A stretch of 64,000 bases of DNA from Marsupella aquatica (GCA_973895155.1 OZ316897.1:2991416-3055415); one strand, 5' to 3'; positions 41,430 through 64,000 are shown, numbered from the stretch's first letter. Made by a program: numbers and translations. The notes: a model not told the origin generated them from the letters alone.

Positions 41430-41576
41430 ATCGTATGTTACAATATCTATAGAGTGATGAAACAATAAATGACAATCAATATCGTAAAGTCAATGCAAGA
41501 GCGTAACATCAATTACGATGCCTTGCAGCGTATGGAAGTTTGACGATAACATATTCCACACGAGAATCGCGTAGAT

Positions 41577-44262: not shown

Positions 44263-44322
44263 TCCGAAGGGCGATGCTGGCTGGATGTCTGTTGTTGTCT
44301 GGTTCTTTAGTTGCAAGGTTGA

Positions 44323-45140: not shown

Positions 45141-45600
45141 TTTTGCTAACTATGTTTACTTGTAGCTTGGCTTAGCAGAATGCACATAGTTAGCAAAAAA
45201 CTGATAGTCTCTCAGGGGGGGTCTACTATCAGAGTTGGAACATGTTAGCAGACAACGGGGTATTTACAAACGATAGGAAACAGCAAACAATAACAGAAAA
45301 TAGAAACTGGTAACAGGAAAATGAGTGGTAATGTTTTTTGAAATTTTTTTGAGAAAAAAAAAGTTTTTTTTTTTTTCAAAATTTTATTTTATTTGCTAGC
45401 GCCCAAAGCTAGCCAAAAAATGTTGTAACTTAGATTTTTTTGGAAAATGAAACTTTTTAGAAAATATTTTGACATGGTTATTTTTCCTGGTAACAGTAAC
45501 TTTTTGCTGGTAATAGGAAAAAATTTCCTGGTACCAGTAAACCTGTTTCCTATTTACTGTCACGCGTGCCATACCTGCAGAAAACTGATAGTAGAGAGAC
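45141..45600. repeat. Cluster of nested inverted repeats upstream of the BRCT ORF
   Basis: Perfect 15-bp IR ttttgctaactatgt (45141-45155) / acatagttagcaaaa (45184-45198); tctactatcag (45222) / ctgatagtaga (45585); ataggaaacag / ctgtttcctat. Confidence 0.7.
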
Positions 45601-45966
45601 AAACCCTCGGACTATGAAAGAAAGCTTGTTTGTCAATGTGATAGAGAACCTGGTTTTTTTTACCTGCGCAGTTTATTTAACCTGGCATTTTTGTTTTTCA
45701 AAGCATTTCTGGTGAGACTGCAAAGAGTGTCACAGTGAGAGAGTTTGCGCGCGGTCCTCATTCACTTTCACTGTACTAAGCTTTTGGTGTATGTTGAGAC
45801 TATTGATGTTTTATTGAGCTTTTTGTTGTGTGTGGGACTTGTGCAGGGGTTTTGTATTGAATTATCACAGAGCAGCAATTCTAAGCATCTGTTTGGAGGA
45901 TTCAAGTAAGCTTCATTTTGTTGCAGAGCAGCAGACGGTTTCTTATAGTTTATGGTTTAGTGTACC

Positions 45967-46371
45967 ATGAGTCGTAGACAAGCCATTCCACAAAAAGCCA
46001 CACCTAGTTCAGTATCAAACCCCATTTTCCAAGGCGTGAATGCCATCTTAGTTCAAAATGGATTTTCCAAAGCTCGTTTTCAAGTCTTTCACAAAAAGCT
46101 GATAGAACGTCATGGTGGACAATGTGATATTCTATCCACCAAGACCACTCACATTGTTGCCGATTCATGGAAAGCAGTCCTGTCCACATGGTCCTGGTCT
46201 GATGTGAATCACTTTGTTCAAAATCAGGCAATGAAAGTTGTCTCATTTGAATGGATGTGTGAATCCTTAAAGGTAGGGGTACGTCTGCAAGAAGGCCCTT
46301 TCAACTTAATGTTGACTGAGGTAGAATCTGAGGCTCACAATACCAAGAGGAAACTAGAAATGATTAAATAG
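45967..46371 (+). CDS. Stand-alone BRCT-domain protein (Pol-lambda N-terminal-like), transposon-associated
   Basis: IFQGVNAILV...LIERHGG...STKTTHIVA...VVSFEWMCESLKVGVRLQEGPF matches the BRCT consensus (F.G, GG, THxV, WxxxS). Confidence 0.82.
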   Translation: MSRRQAIPQKATPSSVSNPIFQGVNAILVQNGFSKARFQVFHKKLIERHGGQCDILSTKTTHIVADSWKAVLSTWSWSDVNHFVQNQAMKVVSFEWMCESLKVGVRLQEGPFNLMLTEVESEAHNTKRKLEMIK

Positions 46372-46709
46372 GATGAGGCAAATGCCCTTTGGCAAAGTGT
46401 AAACTTGATCATACCAAAACGCAGGTGTATATAGGACTGGTTACGTTTTCCAAGTGTATCCCTGTGTTTGGTGCAGTTTACATAATAAAGACCTGCTTGT
46501 CTGATGCAAATGTTTGCATATAGGAGTCTGTCTATTTTTGGACGCTATCTACTCTGTATGTTTGTTTGATACTTGTATGCATGAAATATAACTTCAACTC
46601 CCTTTCTTTCTTGCAAGGATCAATTGGTAGAAGTCGGGAATTGGGGAGGTTGTGTTCAGGCCCTTGCTAAGGTCAATCCCGATACCTTGTTTGTTGTGGC
46701 CTTGTCATT

Positions 46710-47099
46710 TTGTTGGAGTGGGCACAATCTGTGTGTACTGCACTGAAGATGGTTGTCACACGTAGTGTATTGTCTGAGTACCATCGACAGAAGGGTGAGC
46801 GCTTTCGTGTGAAGATGATCCATTCTGGGATCGTGCCTACAGACTGTGCTGTGACCTGGGGCTATCCATCTGTGCCTCGCAACCATTACCGGAGGCTAAG
46901 TACATCCCCACCAGCCCCAAACAGTATCCGTCTAGTTAAACAGACAGATGGGGTGCTGGATGAGGACCGTGTCTTCTTGGAGGCTTGTCTCCATTGTCAC
47001 ACCCATACATGTGATCGTTGTAGGGGAGGTGACTCTAACATAGTGCAGACTTTTGCACAGTACATGGCAAGAATGTCGTGGGGTGGTTGCCTGGCATGA
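46710..47099 (+). other. Unassigned ORF or decayed coding segment between the BRCT and PHD genes
   Basis: 129 open codons, co-oriented with neighbours; CLHCHTHTCDRC motif; no family recognised. Confidence 0.3.
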
Positions 47100-47367
47100 A
47101 ACACCTGTCATTTCATCAATGATTGTGTCTATGGTGGGACATGTCCAGGTTCTGCCCATGATGGTGATGCACACTCAAGTTGTTGACTTCTGATTCTGCA
47201 TTGCTCACATTGCAGGATGGATCAAAGGAGCCCACAGGGAAGTCATGCCCCTGGTGGTGCCTACTGGCTATGATTGCTGGTGGACTATCGCTCCTTCTGG
47301 TACATCACATGCCTGCCCCTCTGCCTGCCCCTAATTTTTGAAGGTAATTTTGCAGATCTTGTTCAGC

Positions 47368-48067
47368 ATGACACACATTGCTCGTCAGTTGCTGGATCCA
47401 AGATTTGGGCATAGGGAGCACCTTCGTATGGATCCCCCTTGCTGTTTTGAATGTGATGAGGGAGGAACTGTTTTGTTCTGTGATGACCCTTGTGGTCGCC
47501 ATTTTCATTATGTAGTTGATGGCCACAACCCCGATGAGGAAGATGGCCATGGACCTACATGTCAGCGGATTGTCATTTCCAGAGGTCATGATTGGGCTGC
47601 AGCTTGGCTTTGTGACCTCTATCAGCAAAACAGAGGAAGATGTTTTGGTTGTGGACTCCTTGGCAGAACCTTGAGACCCACCACAGACGAGCCCCTTGTG
47701 ATCCAGTGTTCTCATGATGACTGCTACTCATTTTACCATGTGGGTTGTCTTCGGACACTTCTGCGATATATTGGGGGAAATGCCTTTCACCCGCCATCCA
47801 GATAACCCTGATGCACATCCCGATGCTCTTATATGCCCACGACATTACTGTGAGGTCTGTAAGGAGTATCGGGAGGGCATTTGGGATTTTGTCCAATGTC
47901 GTAGATGCCCTCGTGCATGGTGTCGTGATGAAGGACCAACAACAGACAAGCACTTGAGGAGAAGGGTGAGGGGCCGAGACACCTGGGACATTGGACAGTG
48001 GCGCATGATTTACTGTACTTGCCATGTCATCCCAGAGGGTTCTGATATCCCAAGTACCCATGACTAG
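47368..48067 (+). pseudogene. Stand-alone EDM2/NSD-type composite PHD finger gene, frameshift near the G-run at 47773-47777
   Basis: CFECDEGGTVLFCDDPCGRHFH...RCFGCGLLG...QCSHDDCYSFYHVGC | ICPRHYCEVC...QCRRCPRAW...MIYCTCHVI. Confidence 0.85.
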
Positions 48068-48147
48068 ACCAGCATGACTGCTACTAATTCCACCATCTTA
48101 TAACTTGAACCTTTTTTGTAGTGGACCCATAAGACAACCTAAATTAT

Positions 48148-48385
48148 ACTTAAATATTTGGTTGAATGCTATGGATCGACTTAAGTATTTGGTTGAATGC
48201 TATGGATCGACTTAAGTATTTGGTTGAATGCTATGGATTGACTTAAGTATTTGGTTGAATGCTATGGATCGACTTAAGTATTTGGTTGAATGCTATGGAC
48301 TTAAGTATTTCGATGAATGAAATGGACTTAAGTATTTGGTTGAACGAAGTGGAAGTTTGATGAACTGAAATGGACTTAAGTAAGT
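48148..48385. repeat. 31-bp minisatellite, about 5 near-perfect plus degenerate copies
   Basis: acttaagtatttggttgaatgctatggatcg at 48148, 48179, 48210, 48241, 48272; no spacers. Confidence 0.95.
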
Positions 48386-48535
48386 TTCATTGACTACAAT
48401 AGATTGAGTGTTCAAATGACATTGTGAATGGTTGACTTGAGTCCTGATCTTTTTCCATGTCTGTCCATTGTTGTATGACAGGTTCATGTACCTAATCCCT
48501 ATCCCTTACTTTCACAGCCTGTATAACTGTCCATC

Positions 48536-51500
48536 ATGGCACACCTAGGCATGAGCTCTGTCAGATTGGTAGAAAAGGGTGAGGAGGGAGGAAAGCCTGA
48601 TACGCCAATCTGTGTCATGTCCTTCAAAGAAGGGCAGACTCTGGCAGATTTTTGTCTGAAATGTGTTGGTGCAATAGAGTTTGACTTTGATTTTTGGGAT
48701 GAGAGGTTGCCTGGTCGAGTCCGACGCTTTTCAGAGAAGACTGTTGGGGTGACTGAACTTCAAGGGACAATTTATGTGATTGCAGAGTTACCCTCAGTTG
48801 CCTTGCCTGCTGAGAGGGTCACTATTGGTTCCTCTCATTCATCTGCTGCCACTGTGTCCAATGTGGCAGGCACAACTCCATTGTCTCAAGGACAAACACA
48901 AGGGGTGCCAGTACAGGCTACTGTACAGCCTGTCACAGGCTCCTTTGAGTCTCACCTCAAGTCTGAGGCTGCATCAAAGGCCTGGAATGATGAGTGGTTG
49001 AAGCTACGATCCTGGGTGAACCAGAAGGGCTTTGGTGAGCACAAGTGGAAAGTGCGAACATGGGATGAGGGAGGGGAGTGTCGAGGTCATCTAGAATGCT
49101 TAGAGTGTAGGGAAACTTATGGGAATGCAGCCACTTCACAGGTGCTCAAGTCCATCGCAAATTGCTTTAGCAACTTCAAGACAAAGCACCTGACCAACCC
49201 TAAACACAAGGAGAACTAATGTAAGCGAAGGGGTTTAGCTGGAGCTTTGGTGACGGCTGCTGACACTATACAGCAACCACTGTTTGATCATAGTATGCAA
49301 ATAGGGGCTGGTGTGGAAATAGTTGGAAAGTTGAATGCAGAGGTAGGTGGCGTGGTAGAAGTGTTCTCTATCACACCATCTCCCACTGATCCAACATTTG
49401 CACAGAGGTTATTCCTGTTTAAGGTTAGATGTACAGTCTGTGGCAAGCTACATACTGACATGTGCCCTAAGAAATCCAATTTGGAACACAATTTAAGGCA
49501 ACACCTTGTCAGTCGAGATCATATGGATGCACTTGAGAATGTCATCACCAGTACCCAGGCTGCACTGAGGGCAGGGAAGAAGGGGAGACCAAGGAAGCCT
49601 GATGCTCGTGATCTGTTTCCATCTCAAAATTCTATTCTGAATTTCTTTAGAGAGGACAACTCTACTGTAGGGAGCAGTTCAGGCAGAGGTGGGTTGTATT
49701 CCTCCGTTGAGCCAAGTTTAAGTTTGCTTTGTTGGGGCCTGTGGGAGTTAGAGGTCAAGTGGACAGGGGATTCTATGGCTGTGAAGGGCATACTTGATGA
49801 TCAAGAGGGAGGGAATGTCTAGGACTGTGACCGTACCACCTGTGCTGAGGTTTTCAATGTAACTAGCCAGTCAGTTGTTGGTATACAGGGTTGTTTTAGG
49901 CACAAGCAATGTCACAGGGTGTCCATTAATTAATGGAGGTGGTTTTCAAAACCTCACTTGCACTCTATGTGATTCAATAAAATGTGAAGATGATTTTTGT
50001 GGCAGGGTGCACAGGGAAGCGGAAGCATTAGTGCAAAGAGGAGACAGCTGTCAGGACTACACAGGGTGGGATAAGGTTGGCATACTTGACCAAAACCGAA
50101 CTGAGGGAACATGTTGGTAACCTCAACACTCGCTTTAGGAAACAGCATTGACTGTTGGCACAACAGGCTCAGAAAATTTGTGCCTTGAGTGTTAGGCAAA
50201 AGAAGCTAGAAGATTTATTAGGAGTAGCCCATGATAGGAAAGATTTAAGACTGTTTCTGAGAAATATTGTGAATGGACATAGGCGTGGTGCTTTTGGTGG
50301 CAAGGAAGGGTTGTGGGATTTCCTGACAGATGTAGCTAAGAACTTGCAGAGAGTTGCTAAGGGTTATCGATACACTAAGAGAACCAAGGCCTTTTCCCAA
50401 GCCATGTTCCAGTTTGGAGGTAGACAAGTGGCTCATTATTTCCAGGCAAACCTAGGTGGTCCAGGTCTGAAGACCTTGAAACGTGATAGAGCAAAACTAC
50501 CACCCTTTAGAGCTGGCATTCGAAAAGAGATATTCCAGGAGGTGTGCAGAGTACTATGTGCATCAAAGCAGTCACTTGGAATTTCAGGAGATGTACCAGT
50601 AATGTTTGCTGAGGATGAAACAAGGATAAAAGAGAGACCCGGGTTTGTGTTTTTGTCTCTGTAGTAAATTAGCTTGTTCTTTTGAATGTGTTGGATGAGT
50701 TTGCACGTCATGAGCTGATGTGTGTTTTGTATTGTGTGTGACAGATGGGAAGCTAAATATGACACCCTCATTGGTTTTTGTGGCCCCTTAGAGGAGCACA
50801 CATGTTCTTTTGGCTTGGAAGTACTGGTTGGAGCAGGTACTAAAGGGTATGACAAGATTGTAAGTACTTTTGAGCAATATGCCAAAGGCATGTATGCTAG
50901 AGTAATCATTGTCAATCCTCTACATGCAAAGATGCCTAAATTGGCATTGTGTGTTCTACCAACATGTAACAAGTTTAGAGCTCCCTGGGTAAGAGAGCAT
51001 TGGGTGCAGCTGAAGTCCATGTGGAACACACATTGCAGAGACAGTGTTGGTTCTTTGTTGGGCCATGCTAGTGATGGTGATGCTCGTCGTAGGAGATTGA
51101 TGATGGAAGATTATACTGCTGTGAATGGTTCCTTTCCTAGGTATAGTGTAGGATGGGTTGGGTGGCAATACTCAGTGTCCATACTTCCGAATTGAGATCT
51201 ATATGGTTTTGGAGACCAAGACCCACCTCACAATGGCAAGAAGGCAATTAACCCATTGGACCGAGTGTTTGCTATGTTAGTTCTTGGTGATCAGCATGCA
51301 TCTTTGTCATATGTCACATCTGTTTATAACCATTATGCAATTCATGAGCATGGTTTGCATTGGGATGATGTGAATAGGACAGATAGACAAAATTGGGCTG
51401 GCCCACAACGAATAGCTTCCAGGAGAGTGCAGGCCTGCCTACAGCATATGTATGAGCAACGAGATGTTCGTCATGACAGAAGCTTTGGGACCATGATATA

Positions 51501-52962
51501 GAGGTTTGTGCAGACTACATGGATATTTTCTTCTCTGTTAAGCACGACCTAAGAACCCGTGTTGTCTTGGCATCAAAGGTATCTTGGTTCTTCCAATTGT
51601 GGAGGCTATGGTTGAGGTATGGTGATCATTTTGTGACAGGGAATGCTGGATCTATCACAGAGAAGAACATGATTTCTGTGCAGGCTTTCCATGATATCAA
51701 CATGTCTTGTCATTTTGTAGTATTGTTAATCTATGCCTTTCGGGACAAGTTCCCATATCTGCAAGTTCCATTTCACTTGTTGGGATCAGATTGTTGTGAG
51801 ATATTTTTTAGCAAGGTAGGTGGCATGAGTGGCCATGAGAGAAATTATGACTTTGGATCTCTACTGGACAGTGTAGTGGGACTGAATCAACTAGCTGAAT
51901 TAGAGTATGGACCAGAGGGATTGAAGATACGTCGATCACATGATAAACAGGATCATGTTTGGGCAACTTTACATCCTTTGGATGAAGGAGAACAAGCTCC
52001 AAATTTATTTGATTACTCTGCAGTTCAGACTAATGAGCTAGTTGTTGATGCTCTAAAGGAAGGTTTGCAGGAAGCAAAGGATTTGTTGTGCAAGCTGAAC
52101 ATGTCACCAAGGAGTTCTTTGCCAGCAGCGAAAAGACGATGGTGGGTTCATCCTTGGGAGGTGGAGGCAGAGACTTGGCCGGATACAAGTGTCATGAAAG
52201 AGGCTGTGTTATGTGATGATGCTGAAGACACAATTGAGCATCGATCTACTATAGGCCCTAGACCTGAGCCCCCAATTGGAGAGTTTCTAGAGTTTGAAGA
52301 TCCTGAAGAAGATCTCAATCGGATTGATTCATGGGACACTCTGGACAGTCAGGATTGTATTGAGCCACTAATAGTTGATGATTGTTCGATTGAGGTGGAC
52401 ACTAACCCATTTTGTGAGATGGAGACACTAGGACATGAAGTAAGGCATGTCTTGGCTGGAGTTCAAGCAGACTTAACTGATGTGTAGACACCCGGGTCAG
52501 TAGTGTCTACTATAACTTATGAGGGAAGGACTATCTACAAGTCCACTCCTGTGAGTCAATTGTGCTGCAATCCTTTTATGTCAAAGGATAGGCTAACTAG
52601 GATAGCCCAGAAGACCTATTACACTACTGGGAAGGAGAAGGAAAATGGTGACTCTGTGACTTGTTTGGTTGACATTGGTACTGATATAGCAGTTTTGTTT
52701 GAGTCTGCTACACAGGTTGGTCCTTCTACCAGATCATCCAAGTCAAAGAAGAGGAAGGGAATATATAAAGGGCCTATTGTTGACGCAACATCTGCAAAGA
52801 AGGAATATTGGTTGGGTAGGATTGAGTTTATGATATAGAAGAATGGCTCCCATTGGGTCAGACGTCAGAAAGCAATAGATCTGTTGGACAGGCCTGTACC
52901 TGCAGTTGGACAGAGTGGAAGTGTGTGCCGCTTGCAGTGTAATTGGTACAAATCTATTGGTA
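48536..52962 (+). mobile_element. Decayed large DDE transposase gene, P-element/THAP9-like, interrupted by CACTA at 52963
   Basis: ORF pieces join across stops and frameshifts with one probable intron (50643-50744). Ordered motifs MFAEDETRIK, GHASDGD, DQDPPHNGKKAIN (DxxH), DDVNRTDRQNW, GSDCCEIFFS; N-terminal CxxC...H...H fingers. Confidence 0.65.
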
Positions 52963-53790
52963 CACTAGTAGAAACCGGGGGGTATTTAGACCCCATTAAA
53001 CGACTATTCAGTACCGTATAGGACTTGGAAACGACTGGGAAGGACTCCAGTCCTTTATAGGACTGCGAGTCGTATGTTTTGTTACTATAATCAACTGAGT
53101 CCTTTATAGAACTGGTTTATAAGTCGTTTAATAGACTGGATTTTCAGTCTATTTTAGTCTTTGTGTGGGTAGCTTTGGTGAGTCGTTTTCAGTCTTTTAT
53201 GGGCTGAGATGGTGAGTCGTTGGGAACGACTAAAAAGGTTATGGAGGGTAGTCTTTAAATATACTTTGTGGGGTATGTATAAGTCTTTCATGTCAACTGG
53301 ATATGAGTGATGAAGACCCCACTATATTACTTGGAATGAACCCACTCTTGTGCACAAATAACATATTGCATTCATGTTTTATTGTGTACTTGGAATGAAC
53401 TCACTCTATAAGTTCACCATTCATCATGTTAACATTAGAATACATAGTTTCAGAAAGCCATCTTCTATACCATGTACACTAATATGAATTCACAGATTCA
53501 AACTTCATAGACTACAAAGAAGGTCACAAAGTATTCCTCTATACCATACACACTAATACTGAAATGATACAAAACAGATTCAAGTATCATAGACAATCAC
53601 CATAGAGCCATAGTTTGACATCAATCACTTGTTTCATACATACAGAATTCAGAAATATCAATGTCACACACAACGGCTCCTTCATCCTCTTTACCAAATG
53701 GAAAAATTGGTACAGATATTTCTTGGATCTTTCCAAGGCAATGTCAAAATGTGACACAATTCACATGATTCTATTTACACTTGCATTCAG

Positions 53791-56700
53791 TCACTGCAGA
53801 CTAACACACTCTGATGGCCAAAGCACAAGAGATCCTACTGCATCTGCAATTATTTCCTGAGGTGGATCATCGTCTCTATTCGGAAATGGCAAATTACAAT
53901 CAGATACAATCACTGTAGTCAACAACACTACTACATGGTCATCCGGGACCACTTTGCCATGGAATTTTGCATGATCCGGTCGCAAAATGCATGTACCCAC
54001 ACATACCTGCGAGTCATCCTCCCATGATAGAAGATTATGGACTGGCTCTGCTGTGGCTATCACCTCCACCTTACCCTGGCTGTTTTTCTTGGCTTTCCTG
54101 GGTGGCTTATACATGACATTATTCATACCTTGGTTGCGAGTCATGACTTTGGCACGAGTGTTTTGTGCTGGTGATCGAGAATTGGCTACACTCTTCTTCA
54201 AAGAATCTGCATCCATATTTGACACTTCTGATTGTGTAGCAGGATTTCCTTGCGACATCATCTCAGTATCTGCCAACATTGTACTTGCTTCAATTGAAGC
54301 ATCTACAATCTTACTTGCATCCAATGTTGCTCCCAAGTTTCGACGTCGCTTCACCCTGCTCCCACTTGGTTGAGAGTCTGTCAACTCTGCATCAACTACA
54401 ATTCAGTGTCATGTCCAACATAAGTCAATCACTCATCACATGTGCTAAATGTACATGTCACCAACCACAAAGTTGTCACTATCTCCTTACCATTATGAAC
54501 AGCCTTCTTCCCCTTCTTTGCCATTGCCATATGCTCCATGTCTGCTTCTATTGATCAATAAACACACCACAATATTCAAGTTGAATCTATTAACCACTGA
54601 ATTGTTTCTCAACGTTCATATAGAGGAATTTAAAGCATCAGCTTACCTGATACCTCCTTGGCTATGGTCACTAAGGCACTGGGCACATCTTCTTCATTAT
54701 TGCTCTTTGAATCACCTGATACATCAATCATGATGTCACTTCAGATCCCAGTTCATCCAACCAGTTCTTACAGAAAAGATTACCTCCAACCGGCTTAAGC
54801 TTCACAAAACTCCATGCACTTTTCAAATGTAATGTACTGGATCATAGCAGGTTACCTGTCTCAGCAACCTTCTTGCCCTTTTGCTTACTGATTACAGGGT
54901 CCTTCTCTGCCTCCACTCTTCCTGCATTCAAACCATTCACTCAATTCATGAAAACTTACTTCTAACATTTGAACATAGGACACAATGAACAATGGGCCGG
55001 TGTCATTTCCATACCTGTGTCAGATTTGCCAATTCCCTTTTTTGTTAACAAGGGCACACTTTGTACAATGTTGCCCTCATTGTTTGGTTGGGAACCACCC
55101 AATTTTTCAATCATAAGCTTGAAATTAGATTCCACTGATGCAAGAAGGTTCGCTACAGATGCCTCCACAATATCCAAACGATCAGCCAATTTACTTTCCA
55201 CTCGAGGGAGTCCACACTCTAATGACTTCAACCGTTCACACATCTCTGTGAGTGTTGTAACAGTTCCCTGTCATAACACAGCTTACATATCTCAGATAAC
55301 TGTCCCCAAGAACTGGTTGCTTACTTCCTACTACATTTCTTTCTGATGCTCAAGGCCAAATAGTCACAGAACATACATAATTACAACATAATCACCTGTT
55401 TGGAAGTCACACTTGTCACCTCACTCCTGTGTTTCATGAACTCCTCTCTCACTTCTTATGCTGATGGTTCTTCACCTGTCAATTTCTTCTGCAGTCCACA
55501 TCAACATACATATGAATGAAACCAAGTGTTGATTGTCAATGAAAATGTAATAATGGTAGCAAGATGATAAGTTTGAGGCTTACTATCAGGCATGTCACTG
55601 CCTTACCAATTGTTCTTTCACTGGAGCATAACTTCCTCTCCCAGCCTGTGAAAGGTGTTTCACTTTGCCTCGAGCATTTGACATCAGTTCACTCTTGCTC
55701 TGTCCAGCCTCCGACATGAACCCTTTGATTAACCGTGTCCATTGATCCAGTTCCAATGATGGGGGTGGTGGCATTCTCCTGTTAGAACCATTGTCTATCC
55801 ACATCCTTTTCAACCTATGCCTCTCTTGTTTCAAAATCCTCATTGCATAATCTGATATGCAATCTTCAACTGGGCCCTTACCATCATTACCAACATAGTC
55901 CCACCGTTCAAGAATGTCCTTGCAGATAGCAGCCCAATCAGCTTTGTTCTGACTCCTAAACTGTGTAATGCTCAAATCTAACCAACGCAATACTTCTCCT
56001 CTTAGGTCAGAATGCCAACGGTTCTTACCATCACATGTGGGAGTTATCCAACCTTCGGAATTCACTTCTACTTTACCAAATTTGTTACTATCTCCTGCCT
56101 TGGTACTCCCTGAAGCGCTACTAGGTGTCCCTCCACGGCCTGGTGTCCCCCCACGGCCTGGGGTCCCTCCACGGCCTGATCTCCCCCCACGGCCTGGATT
56201 GCATTGTCCAAACCTCCCTGGAGTCCCTGCACATTTACAGGATCCATTTACAGTCACTTACATTAGGTAAGTATGAATCATAAATCCTGCTGCCAAATAT
56301 ACACTGGACTTCAGAGCAATTCTGCAATGACCAAGTTACCTCTCCCTTGGCGCATAGATGGTTCTGGACCACCTGTCCTATTGCTTTGTCTTGATGAATT
56401 AGGGCCGTTTCTCCCGCCTGTGAATGATTGCCGCCTATCTAAACGTGGATAGCCTTTGTTGTTTTCGTGATTGTCCCAATCAGAGTCTGCATACCAACAG
56501 GTACATGCCACACTCATGGACCTGTAAGATAAACTCTTTGCCCTAGCTACACATCAGATAAGTCCATATTGAGCTAAATCTCTGCTACCATCACAAAATC
56601 ACTAGCACAAGGCACTTACTTGTCCAATCATCCTCCTCACCTTTCCATTGCCCTCTGTACCCGTCTCTACCACGCTCTGGGTGTTCATATTCATCCCATC

Positions 56701-56962
56701 CATCTTCTGCTCCATCATAGTCATCATCATAATTATCAGGCGTCCCTTGCCAATAACTCTGGCTCCTTCTAGGATATGGATTATGTGATTTCTCTCTAGC
56801 TGCCCACCTACCTGGGACTTGATGAGGGCCTTGTGCATCCTGCATAGGTGCATTTTTCTGTGAGCCCCCTGCATCTGGGTCTCCATCCATATCCAATCTT
56901 TCCTCTTCACCCCACTCTCCAAGCCCCATGTCTGTCTCCATGTCATCACCCTCTTCCCCCAT
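53791..56962 (-). mobile_element. CACTA TnpA-like multi-exon gene(s); exon structure not resolved
   Basis: 55595-56257 ERHRLKRMW...PPPSLELDQWTRLIKGF...KSELMSNARGK...GRGSY (Ptta/En/Spm-like); 53791-54384 FHGKVVPDDHVVV...LPFP...DAVGSLVLWP (TnpA C-terminal-like); acidic and GGTPGR-repeat exons. Confidence 0.72.
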
Positions 56963-57139
56963 AGCTTCTGCACAGCACCCACAACCAAACAGGGAGAATT
57001 AGCACACTAAATTCAAAGTATCAATCAATTTCATGCATATCCAACTATCCTAAATATCATTCCAGGCAGCAATTCCCGTTTTGTGACTCTGTGCAGGTAG
57101 TCATCCTCAACCTCATACTTGCCAATCGCCAGCTGTTGC

Positions 57140-60100
57140 CTATTGCAAATCATCAACCTCATCATATTCCATTTGCCCAGGTTCATCATATGTCTCTCTC
57201 AATGTTAAGGGGATGTAGTCAGTCCCTGCCCGAGTTGGAAGTACAGTCTCATGACTAGGATGCTCAAATGCAGCATGGTCATCCAAACTGAACTCTACTT
57301 TACTTCCATCCATCCGCCTGTTCCGTGCTTGGCTATGGCATACCACCCTCCAGCCATGTGACTCCTCCACATCTGCAAAGAAAGCCTGTTCAACTTGGCT
57401 AGGGAAAACAAAAGGCTCAGACCATTCTGGTACTCTGGACCTAAAATTGGCCAACAAGAACCCATCATGATCACGCTTCATGGTGGCCCTTGGTCTCTGC
57501 CACTCTGATTTCACCCATGATCCCTTCATCAATATCACTGGGACACTTGTGTTACCATAATTCAACACCCAAATGTCGGTCAACTCCCCCACGTAACCCA
57601 TCTTCATCCACCCCCTCTGTTCTTCAGAGGTTCTCTGCTCAAACACAGAAATCAAACCACAATCATATGATACACAATGGTCACCCTGCTCATCCCTCAC
57701 TCGATAATGATTTCCATAAGCTCTCATCTGTTTGTAGGTCAGAATAGACAATCGTGGTGGCACAGATAGAAGATACAAATTCTTCTCCATATCTGGGTGA
57801 TGTCTACTATGCTCTCGAATTGTCACCCGAATCCACTGCTCGAACTGTGGGAAGGGATCCTGCTGCCCAGAGTGTGCAGCTTTTTGCATATCATATTCCC
57901 TGCAATATGAGGTACAGGCATAGTTAGGTCTAAACAACACATGACAACCTAAGATCACCCTTGGAACAGACAAGAAGCATCACAACAAAGGCAAGTCAAT
58001 TCAATCACTCACCTCCACCATGGTTGCATAGGCTCTGTGTTTGCCAGCACATATGAATGAGCCTTGTCTCGAATCGCAACAGGCAGCTGAACAGCACGTC
58101 CCACACCTTCAACAACCTCGCCACTCACTCCATCATCTTCACCAGATTCCAAACTCTTGTCATAGCTTCACCAGACCCAGCCATGTACTCTGTTAGGAAT
58201 CCCAACGTCTCATCCTTAATGTACCCCAATGCCATGGAAGCCTCTGGCCTGTAGTATGTTCTCACATGACCTTTCAACAACTTCATGTATCGCTCCATAG
58301 GGTACATCCATCTGGTACTGACTGGCCCATACTGCCCTAGCTCTTCTACCACATGGATTAGGAGATGAGTCATAACATCAAAGAAAGCAGGGGGGAAGTA
58401 TATCTCCAAGTCACAGAGGACATAAGCAGCATCCTGCTTCAACTGCTCCAATCCTTGGGGATCCCACACTTTCACACATATACGGCAAAATACATTGCAC
58501 AGTCGAAGAATGACATTACCGACTGGTTTCTGCATGAGACCTCTGAGGCATAGGGGCAGAATGTGCTGCATCAACACATGGTAGTCATGTGTTTTCATAC
58601 TGCCAAGTTTATTCTTTGTAATATGCTTCTTGAAGGCACCAGCATAGCCAGAGGGCACTTTCAGACAGCTCAATCTATACAAGAATGTCTTCCATTCATC
58701 CTGTGTGCACACATAGGGAGCTTGGAACTTGAGAAGTACATTGGGATTGCTTGCATGGGGCTTCAACCAAAGGTGAGGGCGAATCCTCTTCTGTTGCATA
58801 TCAGCTCGAACTGCTCCTGTATCTTTCTCACCCGACAAGAACTTCAGCAAGCTCTCACAAATATTTTTCTCAATGTGCATGACGTCCACATTGTGTTTGC
58901 TGGGCTCGAATTCCTGCACTCCACAAAGCAAAGAATTCAACAACAGAAACACTAATTAACCACATAGGAGGATTGTAACCAACATCAATCCACCATTGCT
59001 CCAATCTAAAATTGCAATCATACAGGGGCTGGAGGCTAAGTACATTACCCTCCAGTACTCCAACTCCAAGTCCATCAAGGTCTGTCTTTTCACACCGTGT
59101 TTCACCACTGGATCCTCAGGTTCTCGATCAGTGGCACTTCTCTTGTCCCAATCAGCCTTCCTGGCTGCCCACCTCAGGACTTGCTCTCTGGTGACCCTCT
59201 GTGGTGGGCCACGAAGCTCTGTTTTGTTGTTGAAGTGTGCAATTTGAGACCGTGTGTGCCTGTAAGGATGATCAACAGGCAGATACCTTCTATGCCCCTG
59301 AAATTTCATACTGTGCAGGGCATGCGACCACTCACTTGTCACATTTTTCCCACATGGTGTGCACCCCACATAGCCCTTTGTCACTCGTCCAGATATGATG
59401 CCATGGCCTGGGTAATCTGCTATATCCAGCAAACAAATTGCATGCAGTCTAAAGGGGCTGGGTCGAAGAAGCCCCTTCAGAACATCATGGGTTAACACCC
59501 CTTCTATCCACAAAGTCTTCCACTCTTCCACTGCTGGAGCCAACATGATATCTATGAATTGCTCGGTCATAGAAGCTGGTCCAGGGATTAACAGCACCAT
59601 CATGACAAAAAACCTCTTTGTAGTCATCCATGGGGGAAGGTTGTAATTTAGCAGCGTAACCGGCCAACATGAATAACGGTTGTTTTTGTCTCCAAATGGG
59701 TTTACTCCATCCAGTGATAGACCAAATCGAAAATTCCGCTTCTCTGCAGCAAACTGTGGCCACCTCTCATCAACAAATTTCCAATGGTTGGAATCTCCAA
59801 TGTGACGCTGCAGGCCATCACTGCTCTTGTTATCAGGAGTCCATGTCATCAGCTTGGAAATGGCAGGGCATCTAAACAGACGTTGTAGTCTAGGAATGAG
59901 AGGAAAATGACGAAGAACCTTGGCAGGGTGTGTACATTTCCCTACATTCTTGTACCTGTGCTTACCACAATGAGGGCATGTCAATTTATCTGCATGCTCT
60001 TTGCGAAAGAGAACACACCCATCAGGGCATGCGTCAATAGACACATAGTTCAGCCCAAGGTTAGACATCAATTTCCTAGCCTCGTACATATTTTTTGGAA

Positions 60101-60839
60101 TTGAATTACCATCTGGTAACACATTTTGGCGTAGGAAGGTCAACAACTCTGTCACAAATATATTGGGAACATTGTGATTGCCACAGATGTTCAACAACAA
60201 CACGACAAAACCCAGCTTGGAGCAGTTCGACCCCTCGTAGATAGGAATGCAAGCTTCTTTGATGTGTTTGGGGCCCCCAAACACCCACTCCCTCTCTGCT
60301 GCACCTTCCCCAATGTCAAAGTCAGGTTCAGCTTGGCCGTCGCCAATATGTGGCTGCGGTTCATTGTCGTCTTCTGATTCCACTGTGTCGTAAAAAGCAT
60401 CAAGGTCTTCAAAAATCTCTTGAACCATTCTTGGGACATCCATCCCACCGTCCTCAGTGACTGCCTCTGCATCTCCATCTTGGTCATCCACGTTCTCATG
60501 TTGGACCCCAGGACCATCCTCTGCATAGTCTATGTCCTGCTCTACGTAGTCTCTACGCCTAGCTGTATTAGAATCCACAAAGTCAGCTCTCCACTCTTCA
60601 TCAGAGGAGTCTTCTTCTGCTGGTACATTCCAAACCCTCCACCGAGGGTGCCTTTCATGCCACAGCAGGTGAAGGTGCACAGTGTTCAAACTCAACGACT
60701 TGAATCCTTGGCACTGTGTGCATGGGCATCTCATCCTCCTACTCCTACCTTGGGCGGCCCGGGCTTGTTCACGCATCCACAATTTAGAATCATGATGCCT
60801 AATCCTAAATGGGTTGTGAAGAGGCAACCTTGGAGCCAT
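57140..60839 (-). mobile_element. CACTA TnpD/Tnp2 transposase; introns near 59044-58916 and 58011-57903, probable frameshift near 58145
   Basis: CPCTQC; IDACPDGCVLF..CPHCGKHRY; LRHFPLIPRLQRLF; LSLDGVNPF; YNLPPW; DYPG; DVMHIEKN; KTHDYH; FFDVMTHL; WMYPMERYM; GYVGELTDI; EPFVFPSQVEQAFF. Confidence 0.95.
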
Positions 60840-61165
60840 CACTATACACACGCACTCAGCACCCTGTCATTTTATTATGCAAGTGAAAAATACACTTCCT
60901 GTTAAGGATTTCACCCCCGACTGTACTTGCCAAAATACGTAATGTTCCAAAAAAACAAAAAAACAAAAAATATAGGTGCCTGAGTCATGTACCTATTCTC
61001 AAGTGAATGAGACAAAATTCCTAAATGTTTGAGGGTGTCAACTCCTCCGCTGTCCTCACATGTACTGCCTCTGCACGTACATCCATGACCATATCAGAGT
61101 CCAATCATGTATAGTCATAGACACAGGTGCCAGGTGCGAGACCGGTGTGAGATGTCCTCCTCTTA

Positions 61166-61735
61166 CTACCACATCAAATACGGATACCAATCCTGTTGTC
61201 GATGCCACTCAGCCCTGAGGTACTCAGGCATGTACATTAAGTCATCAAGGTCTAAACCCTGCTCATGCCATGGTGGTCTTCGATCCGTGCCTACAAGCAG
61301 TGGCAGCAGTGCCCTCCATGGTGCACATGTTGCTACCAAGTCCCTCCACTGGGTACTAATTAGTCTATATTTGCAGATATCTTGTGCGCCAGACACCACA
61401 AGAACCCTCGGCCAGACATGTGTAAGAACTATATCATCTGCCAAATCAGGCAACAAGGAACCACCTACAGCATCGTGCTTGTCTAACTCATCTGCTGAAA
61501 AGTAAATGTCCTCTTCCGACTGTGCATCCTCATTCACCACAGCATTCACAACACATCCAAGGTATGTAGGCATTATCTCGGATGGAGCTACACTCTGTCT
61601 GGTTACCAATCCACACAAGTAAGCCCAAGCAGTAGCCATGCACGATGCAACCCGTAGGAGGACCCTACATAGGGCTTGACGGTCTGGAAGAGGCAGCATA
61701 CCCACCAAAGTCTTCAACCAAACAGAGCCCAGCAA
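61166..61735 (-). CDS. F-box-like motif protein, CACTA cargo (first ATG 61699)
   Basis: SLLPDLADDIVLTHVWPRV...YRLISTQWRDLV resembles the plant F-box consensus LLPGLPDDxxxxxLxRV...RxVxxxWRxL; no kelch or LRR follows. Confidence 0.6.
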   Translation of the reverse strand: MLGSVWLKTLVGMLPLPDRQALCRVLLRVASCMATAWAYLCGLVTRQSVAPSEIMPTYLGCVVNAVVNEDAQSEEDIYFSADELDKHDAVGGSLLPDLADDIVLTHVWPRVLVVSGAQDICKYRLISTQWRDLVATCAPWRALLPLLVGTDRRPPWHEQGLDLDDLMYMPEYLRAEWHRQQDWYPYLMW

Positions 61736-61875
61736 GTAGATTCACAGTCACACCCCACGCAGCAGGAAACAACAATCACTTCAACTGTGACCAACCATGA
61801 CAAGATGAGTTAGTTCAAGGATCACATTTATTACAAAATTGTGATTTATACAAAAATATGAGGGACTCCTACTCC

Positions 61876-62739
61876 TCACTCTCTCCCACCTTTGCTAAGC
61901 ATACATCTCCGCTGAATCTTGGAGGGCCAGGCCTCAAAAATATCAAAGTCCCAAGCATTCTGTCGCTTCCCTCTAGCTGCTGATTCCAGAAGCCAATCAG
62001 GGGAAAGCACCCAAAGATTGTTGTTCATGACAAAATCACGCACTGTTGTCTTAAAGAATTTTCTGCATATTTTCATGTATGACAGACCTACAACATGAGT
62101 GGAGGTTTCTGTTAGACTCTCCTCCACTGTCCCACCTAGCTCAACAACTATAGACTTGTACAGTCTGCACTTAGTCTCCCCAATTCCTTCTTCTGCAAAT
62201 ACCACACTGAACCCCTTCATAATGGTATTTCTCTCCTTGCCATGCTCATTCAATATAGCATCTGCACGCATAGGATGGTGTCCTATGTTGACAACAGGTC
62301 CATATTGGACAGAAGCAAAGTTGGGTTTCTCTGCCGCTGCTTCATAGGCTTCCTTTTCAGCCAAAGCCTCTGCAGTGGCCTCCTCACTCTCCCACAACTC
62401 ATATTGCTCAGTACTCTGTACACACCTATGTTTAACAGAATCGGTCAGCCAAGAGACTTCAACTACTTTTAGACCTTGGTTGGTAATGGCAGAATCAATG
62501 AAGGACCATGATCACTTGTTCATCACATCCAGCCATGTCCCCGCAACAACATGTGTAGTCTGTGGAGTGATGTCCTTGACTTCAGTCCCATGGAACTCTG
62601 AGAATCGTTTTTGTACGATTGGCCAACTCACTTGGGTGAACCCATAGTGGCCAGGAATCAAAATGGCTTTGATTCCAGCCAACAGAGGCGGGTGGTCAAC
62701 CTTTGTACGTTTCCTAGAGGCCATGTACACACGGGCCAC
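61876..62739 (-). pseudogene. Tandem-BRCT gene (ATG 62724) with one in-frame TGA at 62512-62514, CACTA cargo
   Basis: ORFs 62512-62739 and 61876-62397 share a frame. Read-through gives BRCT1 (LLAGIKAILI..TTHVVAGTW..VEVSWLTDSVK) and BRCT2 (MKGFSVVF..ELGG..STHVV..LSPDWLLESAARGKR). Confidence 0.85.
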
Positions 62740-63322
62740 CTAATCACTGCAGACCAGAAGATAATGCGTTCACCTGATAATCGGAGGGCCCTTAAAATGT
62801 TGCGTTTATAACTTGGTCCAGTCCAGTCGTCTGGTGAGTCTCTGCTCCGATTCCAAACGGGAGAAATATTGGGACAAACGTACTAGACACCTGCAAGCAT
62901 GCACCTCATACTTTGAATATGTGCCTTCACAATATTGAAGGTGACAAGTGCAATTGTTTTGTGATGCCACATACAGATGTTGTAAATGGGCAGACATTCA
63001 ATGAGAATACAAAATGTTGGTACACTTTAAGGGAATTCTCGCAAATTAAATAGCCTTGTAACTTATATGCTCATAATGAGAAGTCCTGATTTAATTTAAG
63101 CAGTGTCATGTAAGTCGTGATCAAAATGATTGCAGAGTTAAAAAAGTTCCTAGAAGGCTTAAGGGGAGTTTTTGAAGGCATGTACCCAGGAACAAGTAAT
63201 GAACTTAGGGTACTTGTTGCCTAAGCATCCTCTCCTACAGAGGTCCTTCTTCTCAAAATTAGAATGTCTGCAATCTCCAAGGTATCCACATCAGGTGCAC
63301 TATGCATGTACATTATTCAGGT

Positions 63323-63961
63323 TCAAAGCCAAGAAATGTGATCTCTCATGGGAGTGTGCAAAGTAGGATCTATGGCATGGCGATGACAATAGAAGATCCA
63401 TCGATCAACACCATGTGCAGAGTGATCATAGATGTGTCTGTCACAAGCATAGCCTTCTGCTTGACGCTCCTTCAAACAATGAAAGTGCCACATGGTGGGA
63501 CACCTAACACAGTGGACTATGTCCACCCAGAAATCTTCATCGTGCTTACCACATGCCTTGCACTTATGAAGTGGGCAAGCTGTGGCAAGATTGGGCAAAC
63601 ATGAAAAACAAAAGAACCTCACACAATATCTGTCAGGGCATTTCCTAACAAGTGGTGGAGCATCAACAGAGCCCTCATAAGACCCCAACTTCCCACACTG
63701 TGCACACTTAGCCTGCTTCTCCAAACAATCAGTGCACATCCAGCCTCCCTGGTGTGCTGACGGGAGGCCCACCCCTGGACAGTTGTTTTCTGCAGCAAGG
63801 TCAGACTCCGGGTTGAGGTGGAAATGCCTCATGCAAGGGCCCTCACATATGGCTAAGCCACCACCATCGTCACAAATGGCACAACAATGAGCTGCCTTAT
63901 GGAAAATCTGACTTGCGGAGAAGTTACTACCATCTGGCCCAACTACACCTGTGTTGCTCAC
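63323..63961 (-). CDS. Stand-alone EDM2-type composite PHD finger protein, CACTA cargo; 5' end uncertain
   Basis: CAICDDGGGLAICEGPCMRHFH...CTDC...CAQCGKLGS...CPLHKCKAC...CVRCPTMWHFHCL...IFYCHRHAIDPTLHTPMRDHISW. Confidence 0.88.
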   Translation of the reverse strand: MSNTGVVGPDGSNFSASQIFHKAAHCCAICDDGGGLAICEGPCMRHFHLNPESDLAAENNCPGVGLPSAHQGGWMCTDCLEKQAKCAQCGKLGSYEGSVDAPPLVRKCPDRYCVRFFCFSCLPNLATACPLHKCKACGKHDEDFWVDIVHCVRCPTMWHFHCLKERQAEGYACDRHIYDHSAHGVDRWIFYCHRHAIDPTLHTPMRDHISWL

Positions 63962-64000
63962 CTCTGTCCCCCGCTCGGATTTTAGGGCGTGCCATGCCTA

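What the first reader, a model, noticed from the sequence alone, without database searches (positions are those of the whole stretch)
45967..63961. Two unrelated DNA transposons carry the same accessory module: Pol-lambda-like BRCT plus EDM2-type composite PHD
Seen: upstream of and co-oriented with the P-like transposase (+) are BRCT (45967), an unknown ORF and a composite PHD (47368). Upstream of and co-oriented with CACTA TnpD (-) are a composite PHD (63961), tandem BRCT (62724) and an F-box-like ORF. The BRCTs align beyond generic consensus: TTHIVADSWKAVLSTWSWSDVNHFVQNQAMKVVSFEWMCESLK vs TTHVVAGTWLDVMNK*SWSFIDSAITNQGLKVVEVSWLTDSVK. The PHDs share the full Cys/His skeleton. Gene order differs and the DNA is too diverged for a recent local duplication. 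Known: EDM2 reads H3K9me2 in the ASI1-AIPP1-EDM2 complex that promotes full-length transcripts through heterochromatin; the Pol lambda BRCT engages NHEJ factors. Inference: an old, selectively maintained cargo cassette exchanged between transposon superfamilies, for anti-silencing, targeting or repair control, analogous in role to MULE VANC proteins but made of different domains.
Basis: partly seen in the sequence, partly recalled or inferred. Interest (0 to 1): 0.93.

Follow-up and report, generated by a model that had tools for sequence, protein, structure and literature searches.

The report
Two transposon types carrying BRCT/PHD genes
In this liverwort-type genome a P-element-like and a CACTA cut-and-paste transposon, lying end to end, each carry their own small genes for a BRCT protein and an EDM2/NSD-type triple-PHD histone-reader module; relatives keep these genes under selection, so they are transposon equipment, but whether one transposon passed them to the other is unresolved.

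Summary
Module A (+) holds a BRCT gene at 45967, a Cys/His ORF and a triple-PHD gene at 47338-48067, followed by a decayed transposase at 48536-52838. Module B (-) holds a triple-PHD gene at 63961, a tandem-BRCT gene at 62739-61876 and an F-box-like ORF, followed by the CACTA TnpD gene.

A CACTA terminus at 52963 shows that the CACTA element abuts or cuts the 3' side of the other element.

The second transposase matches no Pfam or PDB entry. Two collinear parts resemble P/THAP9 RNase-H families in the ESM Atlas, so I call it probably P-like.

The cassette travels with each transposase:
- An independent contig (L013, about 72% DNA identity) has the P-type PHD gene directly upstream of the transposase N-terminus. 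Both show the same dS (0.89 and 0.88) and low dN/dS (0.22 and 0.30).
- A distant CACTA (L008) has PHD, then two BRCTs, then TnpD.
- CACTA-type PHD genes give dN/dS of 0.24-0.39.

The claim of exchange between superfamilies is only partly supported. The BRCT scores favour one TE-borne family. The PHD tree joins the two types weakly (86/69, long branches), and an alternative host origin is not rejected (AU p = 0.24).

"Pol-lambda-like" is weak. Both copies in this window are broken, and function is untested.

The scan reported both cassettes earlier on other DNA of this genome.

The parts
45967..46425 (+). P-type BRCT gene (single BRCT). The ORF 45967-46371 ends at a stop that other copies do not have; homology to P0001 runs on to 46425.
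   Evidence: Pfam BRCT E 1.6e-4. It is 61% identical to P0001. tblastn of P0001 reaches 46425. Position 46369 reads T>C in contigs of X2, X3 and X6.
46671..47099 (+). Cys/His-rich ORF of unknown family between BRCT and PHD (inner start MVVTR...). It is probably frame-damaged near 46720-46738.
   Evidence: No Pfam hit. Diverged contigs of X3, X5 and X6 lie on it, with small insertions at 46720-46738. A small ORF sits at the same place in the Logan contig.
47338..48067 (+). P-type triple-PHD gene, split over two frames by 4 extra bases at 47766-47769, with a C>Y change in finger 2.
   Evidence: PHD_NSD 1.2e-7. It is 57-66% identical to P0018/L007 and L013. The 4 bases are 'left out' at 47766 in other copies. 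Leaving them out gives one frame. dN/dS is 0.22 against L013.
48536..52838 (+). Decayed P-like transposase gene. Eight ORF pieces (T1-T8) lie in three frames with in-frame stops. There are two BED-like CxxC...H...H motifs at the N-terminus, and candidate catalytic motifs AEDET, SDGD and SDxCEIFFSK.
   Evidence: ESM Atlas neighbours carry TNP-like_RNaseH_N, Tnp_P_element, GBD, RNaseH_C and THAP9_C. Relatives occur in Calypogeia fissa, Riccia sorocarpa and metagenomes. No Pfam or PDB hit.
52963..53300 (+). Low-coordinate terminus of the CACTA element (CACTAGTAGAAACC...), followed by subterminal repeats. It marks where the P-like element is cut or abutted.
   Evidence: Seven of the 19 ACGACT/AGTCGT sites in the window fall within these 338 bases. 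The terminus occurs only once in the window.
53791..56257 (-). CACTA second-gene (TnpA-like) region: ORFs 56257-55595 and 54384-53791.
   Evidence: Weak Transposase_24 match (E 0.014). Homologous to the L008 ORFs that carry Transposase_24 and DUF8039.
57140..60851 (-). CACTA TnpD transposase in three ORFs (631, 275 and 277 aa).
   Evidence: Transposase_21 1.1e-59, DUF4218 1.6e-27, DUF4216 1.8e-5. It is 45-57% identical to the L008 transposase.
61166..61735 (-). F-box-like ORF between the BRCT gene and TnpD. It is not shared with the P-like element or with L008.
   Evidence: F-box E 0.081 only. No hit in any locus.
61876..62739 (-). CACTA-type tandem-BRCT gene: one 288-codon frame with a single stop at 62512-62514.
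   Evidence: Homologous to the intact 271-aa tandem-BRCT gene of L008.
63323..63995 (-). CACTA-type triple-PHD gene. A 212-codon open frame starts at a GTG; the ATG that matches relatives lies at 63995 in another frame (1-nt frameshift after codon 11).
   Evidence: PF23011, PF22908 and PF23004 match in order. It is 82% and 75% identical to P0014 and P0015. N-terminus comparison. dN/dS 0.24-0.39.

Best explanation
The stretch holds two dead cut-and-paste transposons lying tail to tail.

- One is a probably P-superfamily element. It runs from an unmapped left end upstream of 45967 to 52962.
- The other is a CACTA element. It runs from its terminus at 52963 to beyond the window end.

Each carries, upstream of its transposase and in the same orientation, its own lineage-specific stand-alone genes. 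These are a BRCT protein (single BRCT in the P-like element, tandem in CACTA) and an EDM2/NSD-type triple-PHD module without the rest of EDM2. The genes belong to the elements. They are linked to the same transposase in diverged relatives, have diverged by the same amount as the transposase, and are under purifying selection.

Shown: anatomy, linkage, selection, and decay of both copies in this window.

Inferred mechanism: the PHD protein reads histone H3 tails at heterochromatic, H3K9me2-type chromatin, as the homologous EDM2 module does. The BRCT protein acts as a phospho-protein or DNA-end adaptor. Together they would help a cut-and-paste element either to stay expressed in, or to integrate into, silenced chromatin, and to have its double-strand breaks repaired.

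Origin:
- About 50% that the two cassettes share one TE-borne origin, meaning a transfer between the superfamilies before the CACTA-type linker deletion.
- About 35% that they were captured independently from host genes.
- About 15% some other history.
For: Domains and homology between the modules.

CACTA terminus and subterminal repeats at 52963.

P-like link:
- L013 has the P-type PHD (63-66% aa identity), then the T1 homolog (63%) 300 nt downstream.
- A Logan contig has BRCT (61% identity), an 82-aa ORF, a PHD_NSD gene, then a 258-aa ORF cut by the contig end.
- PHD and T1 show equal dS (0.89 and 0.88), with dN/dS of 0.22 and 0.30.
- Several distinct diverged contigs of three coded organisms lie on BRCT, the Cys/His ORF, PHD and T1. 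They lack this copy's stop at 46369 and its 4-nt insertion at 47766.

CACTA link:
- L008 has PHD, tandem BRCT, Transposase_21, DUF4218, DUF4216-like and TnpA-like genes in that order, at 38-40% PHD identity.
- dN/dS is 0.24-0.39 among winB, L014 and L015.

Shared origin:
- The P-type BRCT scores 54-67 bits against CACTA BRCT1. Two CACTA BRCT1 domains score only 48 bits against each other. The best solved BRCT scores 27 bits or less.
- The maximum-likelihood PHD tree joins the two types (86/69).

EDM2's PHD-bearing protein binds H3K9me2-marked chromatin (PMC7529245).
Against: - No TIR or TSD of the P-like element was found, so 'inside the element' rests on recurrent linkage and not on mapped ends.
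- The CACTA 5' end lies outside the window.
- 'P-like' has no alignment-based support. There is no Pfam or PDB hit, and two AlphaFold models came out at pLDDT about 43.
- Four groups of related P-like loci (L001-5, L006, L011, L012) show no BRCT or PHD upstream. L009 is a CACTA with PHD but no BRCT. The cassette is therefore optional.
- The PHD evidence for a shared origin is weak. The long branches meet. The P-type goes to a liverwort host family when the CACTA type is left out. AU p = 0.24. Signature columns split 5 to 5. The linker deletion is not shared.
- No host BRCT set could be searched.
- No RNA data were available, no binding test was possible, and the complex prediction gave no verdict.
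Confidence: 0.6

Rival explanations
1. Independent capture (convergence). The P-like element took its PHD module from a liverwort host gene of the 550-770-aa family with a C-terminal triple PHD, and took its BRCT from a host BRCT gene. The CACTA lineage did the same separately. The shared content would then reflect a common selective need, not exchange.
For: - With the CACTA type removed, the P-type PHD attaches beside the liverwort host family, and the branch separating them from the rest has SH-aLRT 92.
- A constrained clade of P-type plus that host family costs only 2.4 lnL (AU p = 0.24).
- The P-type shares the motifs DPPxC, CPRHxC and VQCRRCP with that family. It also keeps the PHD2-PHD3 linker that every CACTA-type PHD lacks.
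- Raw scores of either TE type against host PHDs (90-120 bits) exceed P-type against CACTA-type (65-77 bits).
- Gene order and BRCT number differ between the two elements.
Against: - The maximum-likelihood tree joins the two TE types (86/69).
- Exclusive signature columns split 5 to 5.
- The P-type BRCT is as close to CACTA BRCT1 as CACTA lineages are to one another, and shares a TTHxVA..W..V...WSW stretch with it.
- Two separate captures of the same two domain families, each trimmed to nearly the same borders, is less parsimonious.
Confidence: 0.35
2. The 45967-48067 genes are not cargo of the P-like element. They would be host genes, or the remnant of another CACTA element, that merely lie upstream of it here.
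For: The left end of the P-like element was not mapped. The region 45600-45999 carries few diverged contigs. Several related P-like loci lack the genes.
Against: - The same PHD-to-transposase junction occurs in L013 at about 70-75% DNA identity, with equal dS for both genes.
- The Logan contig shows the same BRCT, small ORF, PHD, next ORF order.
- No CACTA transposase remnant lies anywhere else in the window.
- The P-type proteins form their own family, about 30% identical to the CACTA type.
- All three genes are multi-copy and decayed, like the transposase.
Confidence: 0.05
3. The genes are functionless captured fragments, like Pack-type cargo, carried passively.
For: Both copies in this window are broken. 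Relatives lack parts of the cassette. No expression data were available.
Against: - dN/dS is 0.22-0.39 over dS 0.4-0.9 in both families, similar to the transposase itself.
- Intact ORFs occur in diverged relatives (P0001, P0014-P0019, P0024, and the 271-aa BRCT gene of L008).
- The zinc ligands are conserved (22 invariant Cys/His/Gly/Arg/Tyr columns).
- The layout is kept between CACTA lineages whose PHD proteins are only 38-44% identical.
Confidence: 0.07

Closest known systems
EDM2 (ENHANCED DOWNY MILDEW 2) of plants and NSD-type composite PHD modules
   Same: The same three-finger module (Pfam PHD-1st_NSD, PHD_NSD, PHDvar_NSD in order). The best non-TE matches are EDM2-like proteins of 1,200-1,300 aa and bryophyte 'EDM2 isoform' proteins.
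   Different: The TE proteins are only the PHD module (about 190-250 aa). They lack the RFD-like N-terminus and the C-terminal parts of EDM2. They sit on very long branches. The CACTA type lacks the PHD2-PHD3 linker, and the P-type lacks the H-x-H-C of finger 3. Histone binding is untested.
VANC anti-silencing proteins of VANDAL (MULE) transposons (from my own knowledge)
   Same: A transposon-encoded accessory protein, separate from the transposase, proposed to act on host chromatin for the element's benefit.
   Different: There is no sequence relationship. The superfamilies and domains differ. VANC activity is demonstrated, whereas here function is only inferred.
CACTA/En-Spm elements (TnpD plus TnpA)
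   Same: Element B has Transposase_21, DUF4218 and DUF4216, a TnpA-like second gene, a CACTA terminus and subterminal repeats.
   Different: It carries extra PHD, tandem-BRCT and F-box-like genes ahead of TnpD. I found no paper describing this in the library that I searched.
P element / THAP9 transposases
   Same: ESM Atlas neighbours of two collinear parts carry TNP-like_RNaseH_N, Tnp_P_element, GBD, RNaseH_C and THAP9_C. The D, D, E-like motifs fall in the expected order (triad positions in PMC8230255).
   Different: No Pfam or PDB sequence match and no THAP domain were found; BED-like zinc motifs stand in its place. The ends and TSD are unknown. The host is a land plant. Upstream accessory genes are not a known P-element feature.
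BRCT domains of DNA polymerase lambda and REV1
   Same: These are the best solved matches: Pol lambda BRCT to the second BRCT of L008 (E 7e-4) and REV1 BRCT to the P-type (E 5e-5).
   Different: Scores are only 22-27 bits, well below the 42-67 bits among the TE BRCTs themselves. No polymerase domain is attached.

Membership tests
CACTA/En-Spm superfamily (element B) | TnpD-type transposase (Transposase_21 with DUF4218 and DUF4216) | tested here: met
   E 1.1e-59, 1.6e-27 and 1.8e-5.
CACTA/En-Spm superfamily (element B) | Termini beginning CACTA, with subterminal short repeats | tested here: met
   One terminus lies at 52963, with 7 of the window's 19 ACGACT/AGTCGT sites in the next 338 bases. 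The other terminus is outside the window.
CACTA/En-Spm superfamily (element B) | 3-bp target site duplication | not testable with these tools
   The second end lies beyond base 64000.
P superfamily (element A) | RNase-H-fold DDE transposase homologous to P/THAP9 | tested here: inconclusive
   No Pfam or PDB hit. Atlas neighbours carry PF21787, PF12017, PF21788, PF21789 and PF22824 at scores 0.93-0.96. The AlphaFold models were too poor for a fold search.
P superfamily (element A) | N-terminal THAP DNA-binding domain | tested here: not met
   No THAP hit in T1 or T2. Two CxxC...H...H motifs are seen instead.
P superfamily (element A) | Terminal inverted repeats with 8-bp target duplication | tested here: inconclusive
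   The one candidate pair (44837/53743) has no matching flanks, and its right arm lies inside the CACTA element. The right end is probably displaced beyond the CACTA insertion.
EDM2 orthologues | Composite triple PHD of the NSD/EDM2 type | tested here: met
   Copy B matches three models in order. Copy A matches PHD_NSD above the cut-off and the other two below it. The profile search retrieves EDM2-like proteins.
EDM2 orthologues | Full EDM2 architecture (RFD-like N-terminus and long C-terminal region, about 1,200-1,300 aa) | tested here: not met
   The TE proteins are 187-247 aa and consist of the PHD module only.
EDM2 orthologues | Binding to H3K9me2-marked chromatin | not testable with these tools
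   Known for EDM2 (PMC7529245).
Pol-lambda-type BRCT | Specific similarity to the Pol lambda N-terminal BRCT above other BRCT families | tested here: inconclusive
   Pol lambda is the top solved hit only for the second BRCT of L008 (E 7e-4). The P-type's top hit is REV1 (E 5e-5).
BRCT domain | Match to the Pfam BRCT model above the gathering score | tested here: met
   A scores 22.3 and B2 scores 36.5, both above the 21.3 cut-off. B1 scores only 13.9. L008 scores 36.3.
Selected transposon accessory genes (as opposed to chance neighbours) | Linkage to the same transposase in diverged copies, plus purifying selection | tested here: met
   L013, the Logan contig and L008. dN/dS 0.22-0.39.

The most novel reading that the evidence does not exclude
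Cut-and-paste transposons of two unrelated superfamilies in liverworts use the same two-protein toolkit: a reader-only EDM2-type PHD protein and a BRCT adaptor, possibly with a third Cys/His protein. The toolkit was passed between them or acquired convergently. It acts on H3K9me2-type heterochromatin, either to counter silencing or premature transcript termination, or to steer integration and break repair. That would make it a transposon-borne chromatin system built from domains different from VANC.
Probability: 0.3. Interest if true: 0.85.

Novelty: new variant of a known kind. Interest (0 to 1): 0.68.

Why it matters
Few transposon-encoded proteins are known to act on host chromatin. VANC of plant MULEs and the chromodomains of chromoviruses are examples. 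Here two unrelated DNA-transposon superfamilies keep the same pair of host-like modules under selection: a reader-only copy of the EDM2 PHD module and a BRCT adaptor. This points to a general need of cut-and-paste elements in a heterochromatin-rich bryophyte genome.

The pair also gives a testable handle on several questions:
- What marks does the EDM2-type PHD module read?
- Does a reader-only version compete with the host complex of ASI1, AIPP1 and EDM2?
- How are excision breaks handed to repair?

If the P-like identity holds, this is also an unusual case of a P-superfamily element with accessory genes in a land plant.

Tried and rejected
- **Transposase identity by Pfam and PDB.** Pfam scans (E up to 10) and PDB sequence and profile searches of the second transposase found nothing.
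- **Structure prediction.** AlphaFold2 on two transposase parts with shallow alignments gave pLDDT 42.6 and 43.5. This was too poor for a fold search, so none was run.
- **Ends of the P-like element.** The candidate TIR pair 44837-44856 / 53724-53743 was rejected. It has no matching target duplication, and its right arm lies inside the CACTA element. No TIRs were found in L001 or L006.
- **CACTA-like motif in L008.** A CACTAGCAGAAACC motif at L008:12360 looked like a homologous CACTA end. It lies inside a coding region that aligns to window 54126-53803, so I dropped it.
- **Metagenome scans.** Three attempts found no locus. The P-type PHD and BRCT alignments were scanned, with no confirmed relative.
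- **Homology search with BRCT_A.** One hit only.
- **Cys/His ORF against L007.** The ORF upstream of the PHD gene in L007 showed no significant similarity.
- **Earlier findings by sequence.** Blank.
- **RNA evidence.** No RNA run holds the stretch, so expression could not be checked.
- **Complex prediction.** The PHD and BRCT proteins of L008 gave no verdict (score 0.00). This is not evidence for or against binding.
- **dN/dS against the most distant copies.** L007 and L009 are saturated.
- **Joined gene models.** Inside scripts, the two PHD_A frames were joined with X for the tree. For dN/dS, the 4 bases that other copies lack were left out.

Full report
**What is in the stretch**

The window is from a bryophyte, most probably a liverwort. 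Bases 1-36,000 hold ordinary host genes: a CDC5-type Myb gene, GH3 and GH20 glycosidases, a sperm-tail SHIPPO-repeat protein and a ferredoxin. The closest named relatives of the transposon proteins come from Calypogeia fissa and Riccia sorocarpa.

From 45,967 onward the + strand carries, in order:
- a BRCT ORF (45967-46371);
- a Cys/His-rich ORF with no family (46671-47099);
- a triple-PHD gene spread over two frames (47338-48067);
- eight ORF pieces of one large gene (48536-52838).

On the - strand, reading from the window end, lie:
- a triple-PHD ORF (63961-63323);
- a tandem-BRCT gene (62739-61876), which is one 288-codon frame with a single stop;
- a faint F-box-like ORF;
- a clear CACTA TnpD transposase (Transposase_21 at 1e-59, plus DUF4218 and DUF4216);
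- a TnpA-like region.

The two modules are homologous as proteins. BRCT_A against the first BRCT of B gives 34% identity (E 1e-15), and the PHDs are 28-33% identical. They share no DNA similarity. The observation therefore stands.

**How the two elements sit**

At 52963 the + strand reads CACTAGTAGAAACC. The next 338 bases hold 7 of the window's 19 ACGACT/AGTCGT sites, together with four copies of AGTCCTTTATAGGACTG. This is the low-coordinate terminus of the CACTA element, whose other end lies beyond base 64000.

The CACTA element therefore abuts or cuts the 3' side of the other element at 52962. The right end of that other element is not in the window. The nesting also shows that the two families meet physically.

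Upstream of the BRCT gene lie two small, very abundant repeats:
- One is at 44315-44651. An empty site (44314 joined to 44652) is seen in three runs.
- The other is at about 45257-45575.

I could not map the left end of the P-like element. The one inverted-repeat candidate fails.

**Is the second transposase P-like?**

No Pfam model and no solved structure matches it by sequence. Two AlphaFold attempts were too poor to use.

The support for a P-like identity is of three kinds:
- The ESM Atlas places the part equivalent to T4-T5 next to clusters carrying TNP-like_RNaseH_N and Tnp_P_element (score 0.93).
- The Atlas places T7 next to clusters carrying TNP-like_RNaseH_C, GBD and THAP9_C (score 0.96). 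The two parts fall in the correct order.
- Conserved AEDET, SDGD and SDxCEIFFSK motifs stand where a D, D, E triad would be. The P/THAP9 triad is described in PMC8230255. Matching these motifs to that triad is my inference.

There is no THAP domain. Two BED-like zinc motifs occupy the N-terminus.

It is certainly a multi-copy gene unrelated to the CACTA transposase, with relatives on many contigs. I call it probably P-like.

**Do the small genes belong to the elements?**

For the P-like element the evidence is as follows.
- A contig from another run (L013; 75% and 69% DNA identity in the PHD and T1 parts) has the P-type PHD gene followed 300 nt later by the T1 homolog (63% aa identity).
- A second contig, for which no DNA was served, lists a BRCT gene (61% identical), an 82-aa ORF, a PHD_NSD gene of 247 aa, and then a 258-aa ORF cut by the contig end.
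- Between the window and L013 the PHD gene and T1 have the same synonymous divergence (dS 0.89 and 0.88) and low dN/dS (0.22 and 0.30). They have therefore evolved as one unit under purifying selection.
- Contigs of three coded organisms laid at 80% likeness or more show several distinct diverged sequences over BRCT, the Cys/His ORF, PHD and T1. These copies lack the stop at 46369 and the 4 extra bases at 47766-47769. Leaving those 4 bases out gives one frame across all three fingers.
- No CACTA transposase remnant lies upstream.

For the CACTA element:
- A 13-kb metagenome contig (L008) whose PHD is only 38-40% identical has PHD, tandem BRCT, then the transposase and the second gene.
- Three closer PHD genes give dN/dS of 0.24-0.39.

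The cassette is optional:
- L009 is a CACTA with PHD but no BRCT.
- Four groups of related P-like loci (L001-5, Riccia L006, L011, L012) show neither gene upstream.
- The F-box-like ORF is found only in the window's CACTA copy.

**Both copies here are dead**

Copy A has a stop at the end of the BRCT gene, indels near the start of the Cys/His ORF, a 4-nt insertion and a lost zinc ligand in the PHD gene, and many stops in the transposase.

Copy B has one stop in the tandem-BRCT gene. Its PHD frame starts at a GTG. The ATG that matches relatives (MAR...) lies 34 nt upstream in another frame.

**Exchange or convergence?**

A profile search of 1.84 billion representatives found 488 relatives of the PHD module. 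They fall into these groups:
- CACTA-type stand-alone proteins;
- two P-type proteins (P0018 and P0045);
- a bryophyte host family of 550-770 aa with the module at its C-terminus (Calypogeia, Riccia, and Physcomitrium 'EDM2 isoform' proteins), which is conserved over its whole length;
- long EDM2-like proteins with an RFD-like N-terminus.

The careful maximum-likelihood tree (53 rows, LG+C20 PMSF) joins the P-type and CACTA-type, but only at UFboot 86 and SH-aLRT 69. The tool warns that two long branches meet.

Several results weaken that join:
- With the CACTA type left out, the P-type attaches beside the liverwort host family. With the P-type left out, the CACTA type attaches deep in the tree.
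- Forcing the P-type together with that host family costs 2.4 lnL (AU p = 0.24).
- Signature columns split evenly. Five are shared only by the P-type and the host family (including DPPxC, CPRHxC and VQC). Five are shared only by the P-type and the CACTA type.
- All CACTA-type PHDs lack the PHD2-PHD3 linker that the P-type and host proteins keep. The P-type therefore did not come from within the sampled CACTA group.

The BRCT genes point the other way:
- The P-type BRCT scores 54-67 bits (34-36% identity) against CACTA first BRCTs.
- The two CACTA first BRCTs score only 48 bits against each other.
- Any solved BRCT scores 27 bits at most.
- The P-type and CACTA first BRCTs share a distinctive TTHxVA..W..V...WSW stretch.

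No host BRCT set could be searched, so this is suggestive and not decisive. My odds are about 50% for one TE-borne origin with transfer between the superfamilies, and about 35% for independent capture.

**How it may work (inference)**

EDM2 binds H3K9me2-marked chromatin and promotes full-length transcripts through heterochromatin (PMC7529245). A reader-only copy could do one of three things:
- tether transposon products to such chromatin;
- compete with the host reader;
- guide integration.

A BRCT adaptor could link the element's double-strand breaks to repair factors. Nothing here tests these ideas. No RNA run was available. The complex prediction for the L008 PHD and BRCT proteins gave no verdict, which is not evidence either way.

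**Comparison and novelty**

I found no paper in the searched library that describes CACTA or P-type elements with such genes.

The scan itself has reported the CACTA cassette several times, and the P-type cassette once, on other DNA of this genome. This window is thus a further, decayed instance.

What this window adds:
- the direct juxtaposition of the two families;
- a test of the exchange idea, which comes out unresolved for the PHD genes and mildly favourable for the BRCT genes.

I rate it a new variant of a known kind, namely transposon-borne host-derived chromatin genes. Interest is moderate to high.

Noticed in passing
window 44315-44651 (partial copy at 42635-42792): A short, very abundant MITE-like repeat with the ends CTCGGGGGGGTCACT / AGTGACCCCCCCGAG. 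Contigs of three runs join 44314 directly to 44652, which is an empty site, so the insertion is polymorphic or recent.
   Followed up: partly
window ~45257-45575: A second short high-copy repeat just upstream of the P-type BRCT gene. Many contigs end at both borders.
   Followed up: no
window 40764-42582 (-): Ulp1-type protease ORFs (Peptidase_C48, 1.9e-33) next to a NIF/FCP1-like phosphatase ORF (6e-9), directly beside the transposon nest. They could be cargo of yet another element.
   Followed up: no
window 46671-47099: The Cys/His ORF between the P-type BRCT and PHD genes has an inner start reading MVVTR.... The scan's notes describe an 'MVRTR' Cys/His protein family in CACTA cassettes. If the two are homologous, this would be a third gene shared by the two transposon types. 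The CACTA copy of that ORF would lie beyond base 64000.
   Followed up: no
proteins P0022, P0026, P0027, P0042, P0048, P0076, P0041, P0103: A bryophyte host family of 460-770-aa proteins with the EDM2-type triple PHD at the C-terminus and a conserved N-terminal region that has no Pfam match. It occurs in Calypogeia fissa (pairs about 95% identical on different chromosomes), Riccia sorocarpa and Physcomitrium patens (annotated there as an EDM2 isoform). It is a possible source of the P-type PHD.
   Followed up: partly
L009:3648-5691 and L010: A related CACTA element in which the PHD gene is followed directly by TnpD, with no BRCT gene within the 5.7-kb contig. Cassette content therefore varies between CACTA lineages.
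   Followed up: partly
L011:103-2103: A 666-aa ORF with no Pfam match lies about 3 kb upstream of a P-like transposase relative that has no BRCT or PHD genes. It may be a different cargo gene or an unrelated neighbour.
   Followed up: no
window 48536-49822: The N-terminal part of the P-like transposase has two CxxC...H...H (BED-like) motifs where P/THAP9 proteins have a THAP domain.
   Followed up: no
window 48148-48228 and 48272-48344: An 81-nt direct repeat (84% identical) in the spacer between the P-type PHD gene and the transposase. Some other copies differ here by joints or insertions.
   Followed up: no
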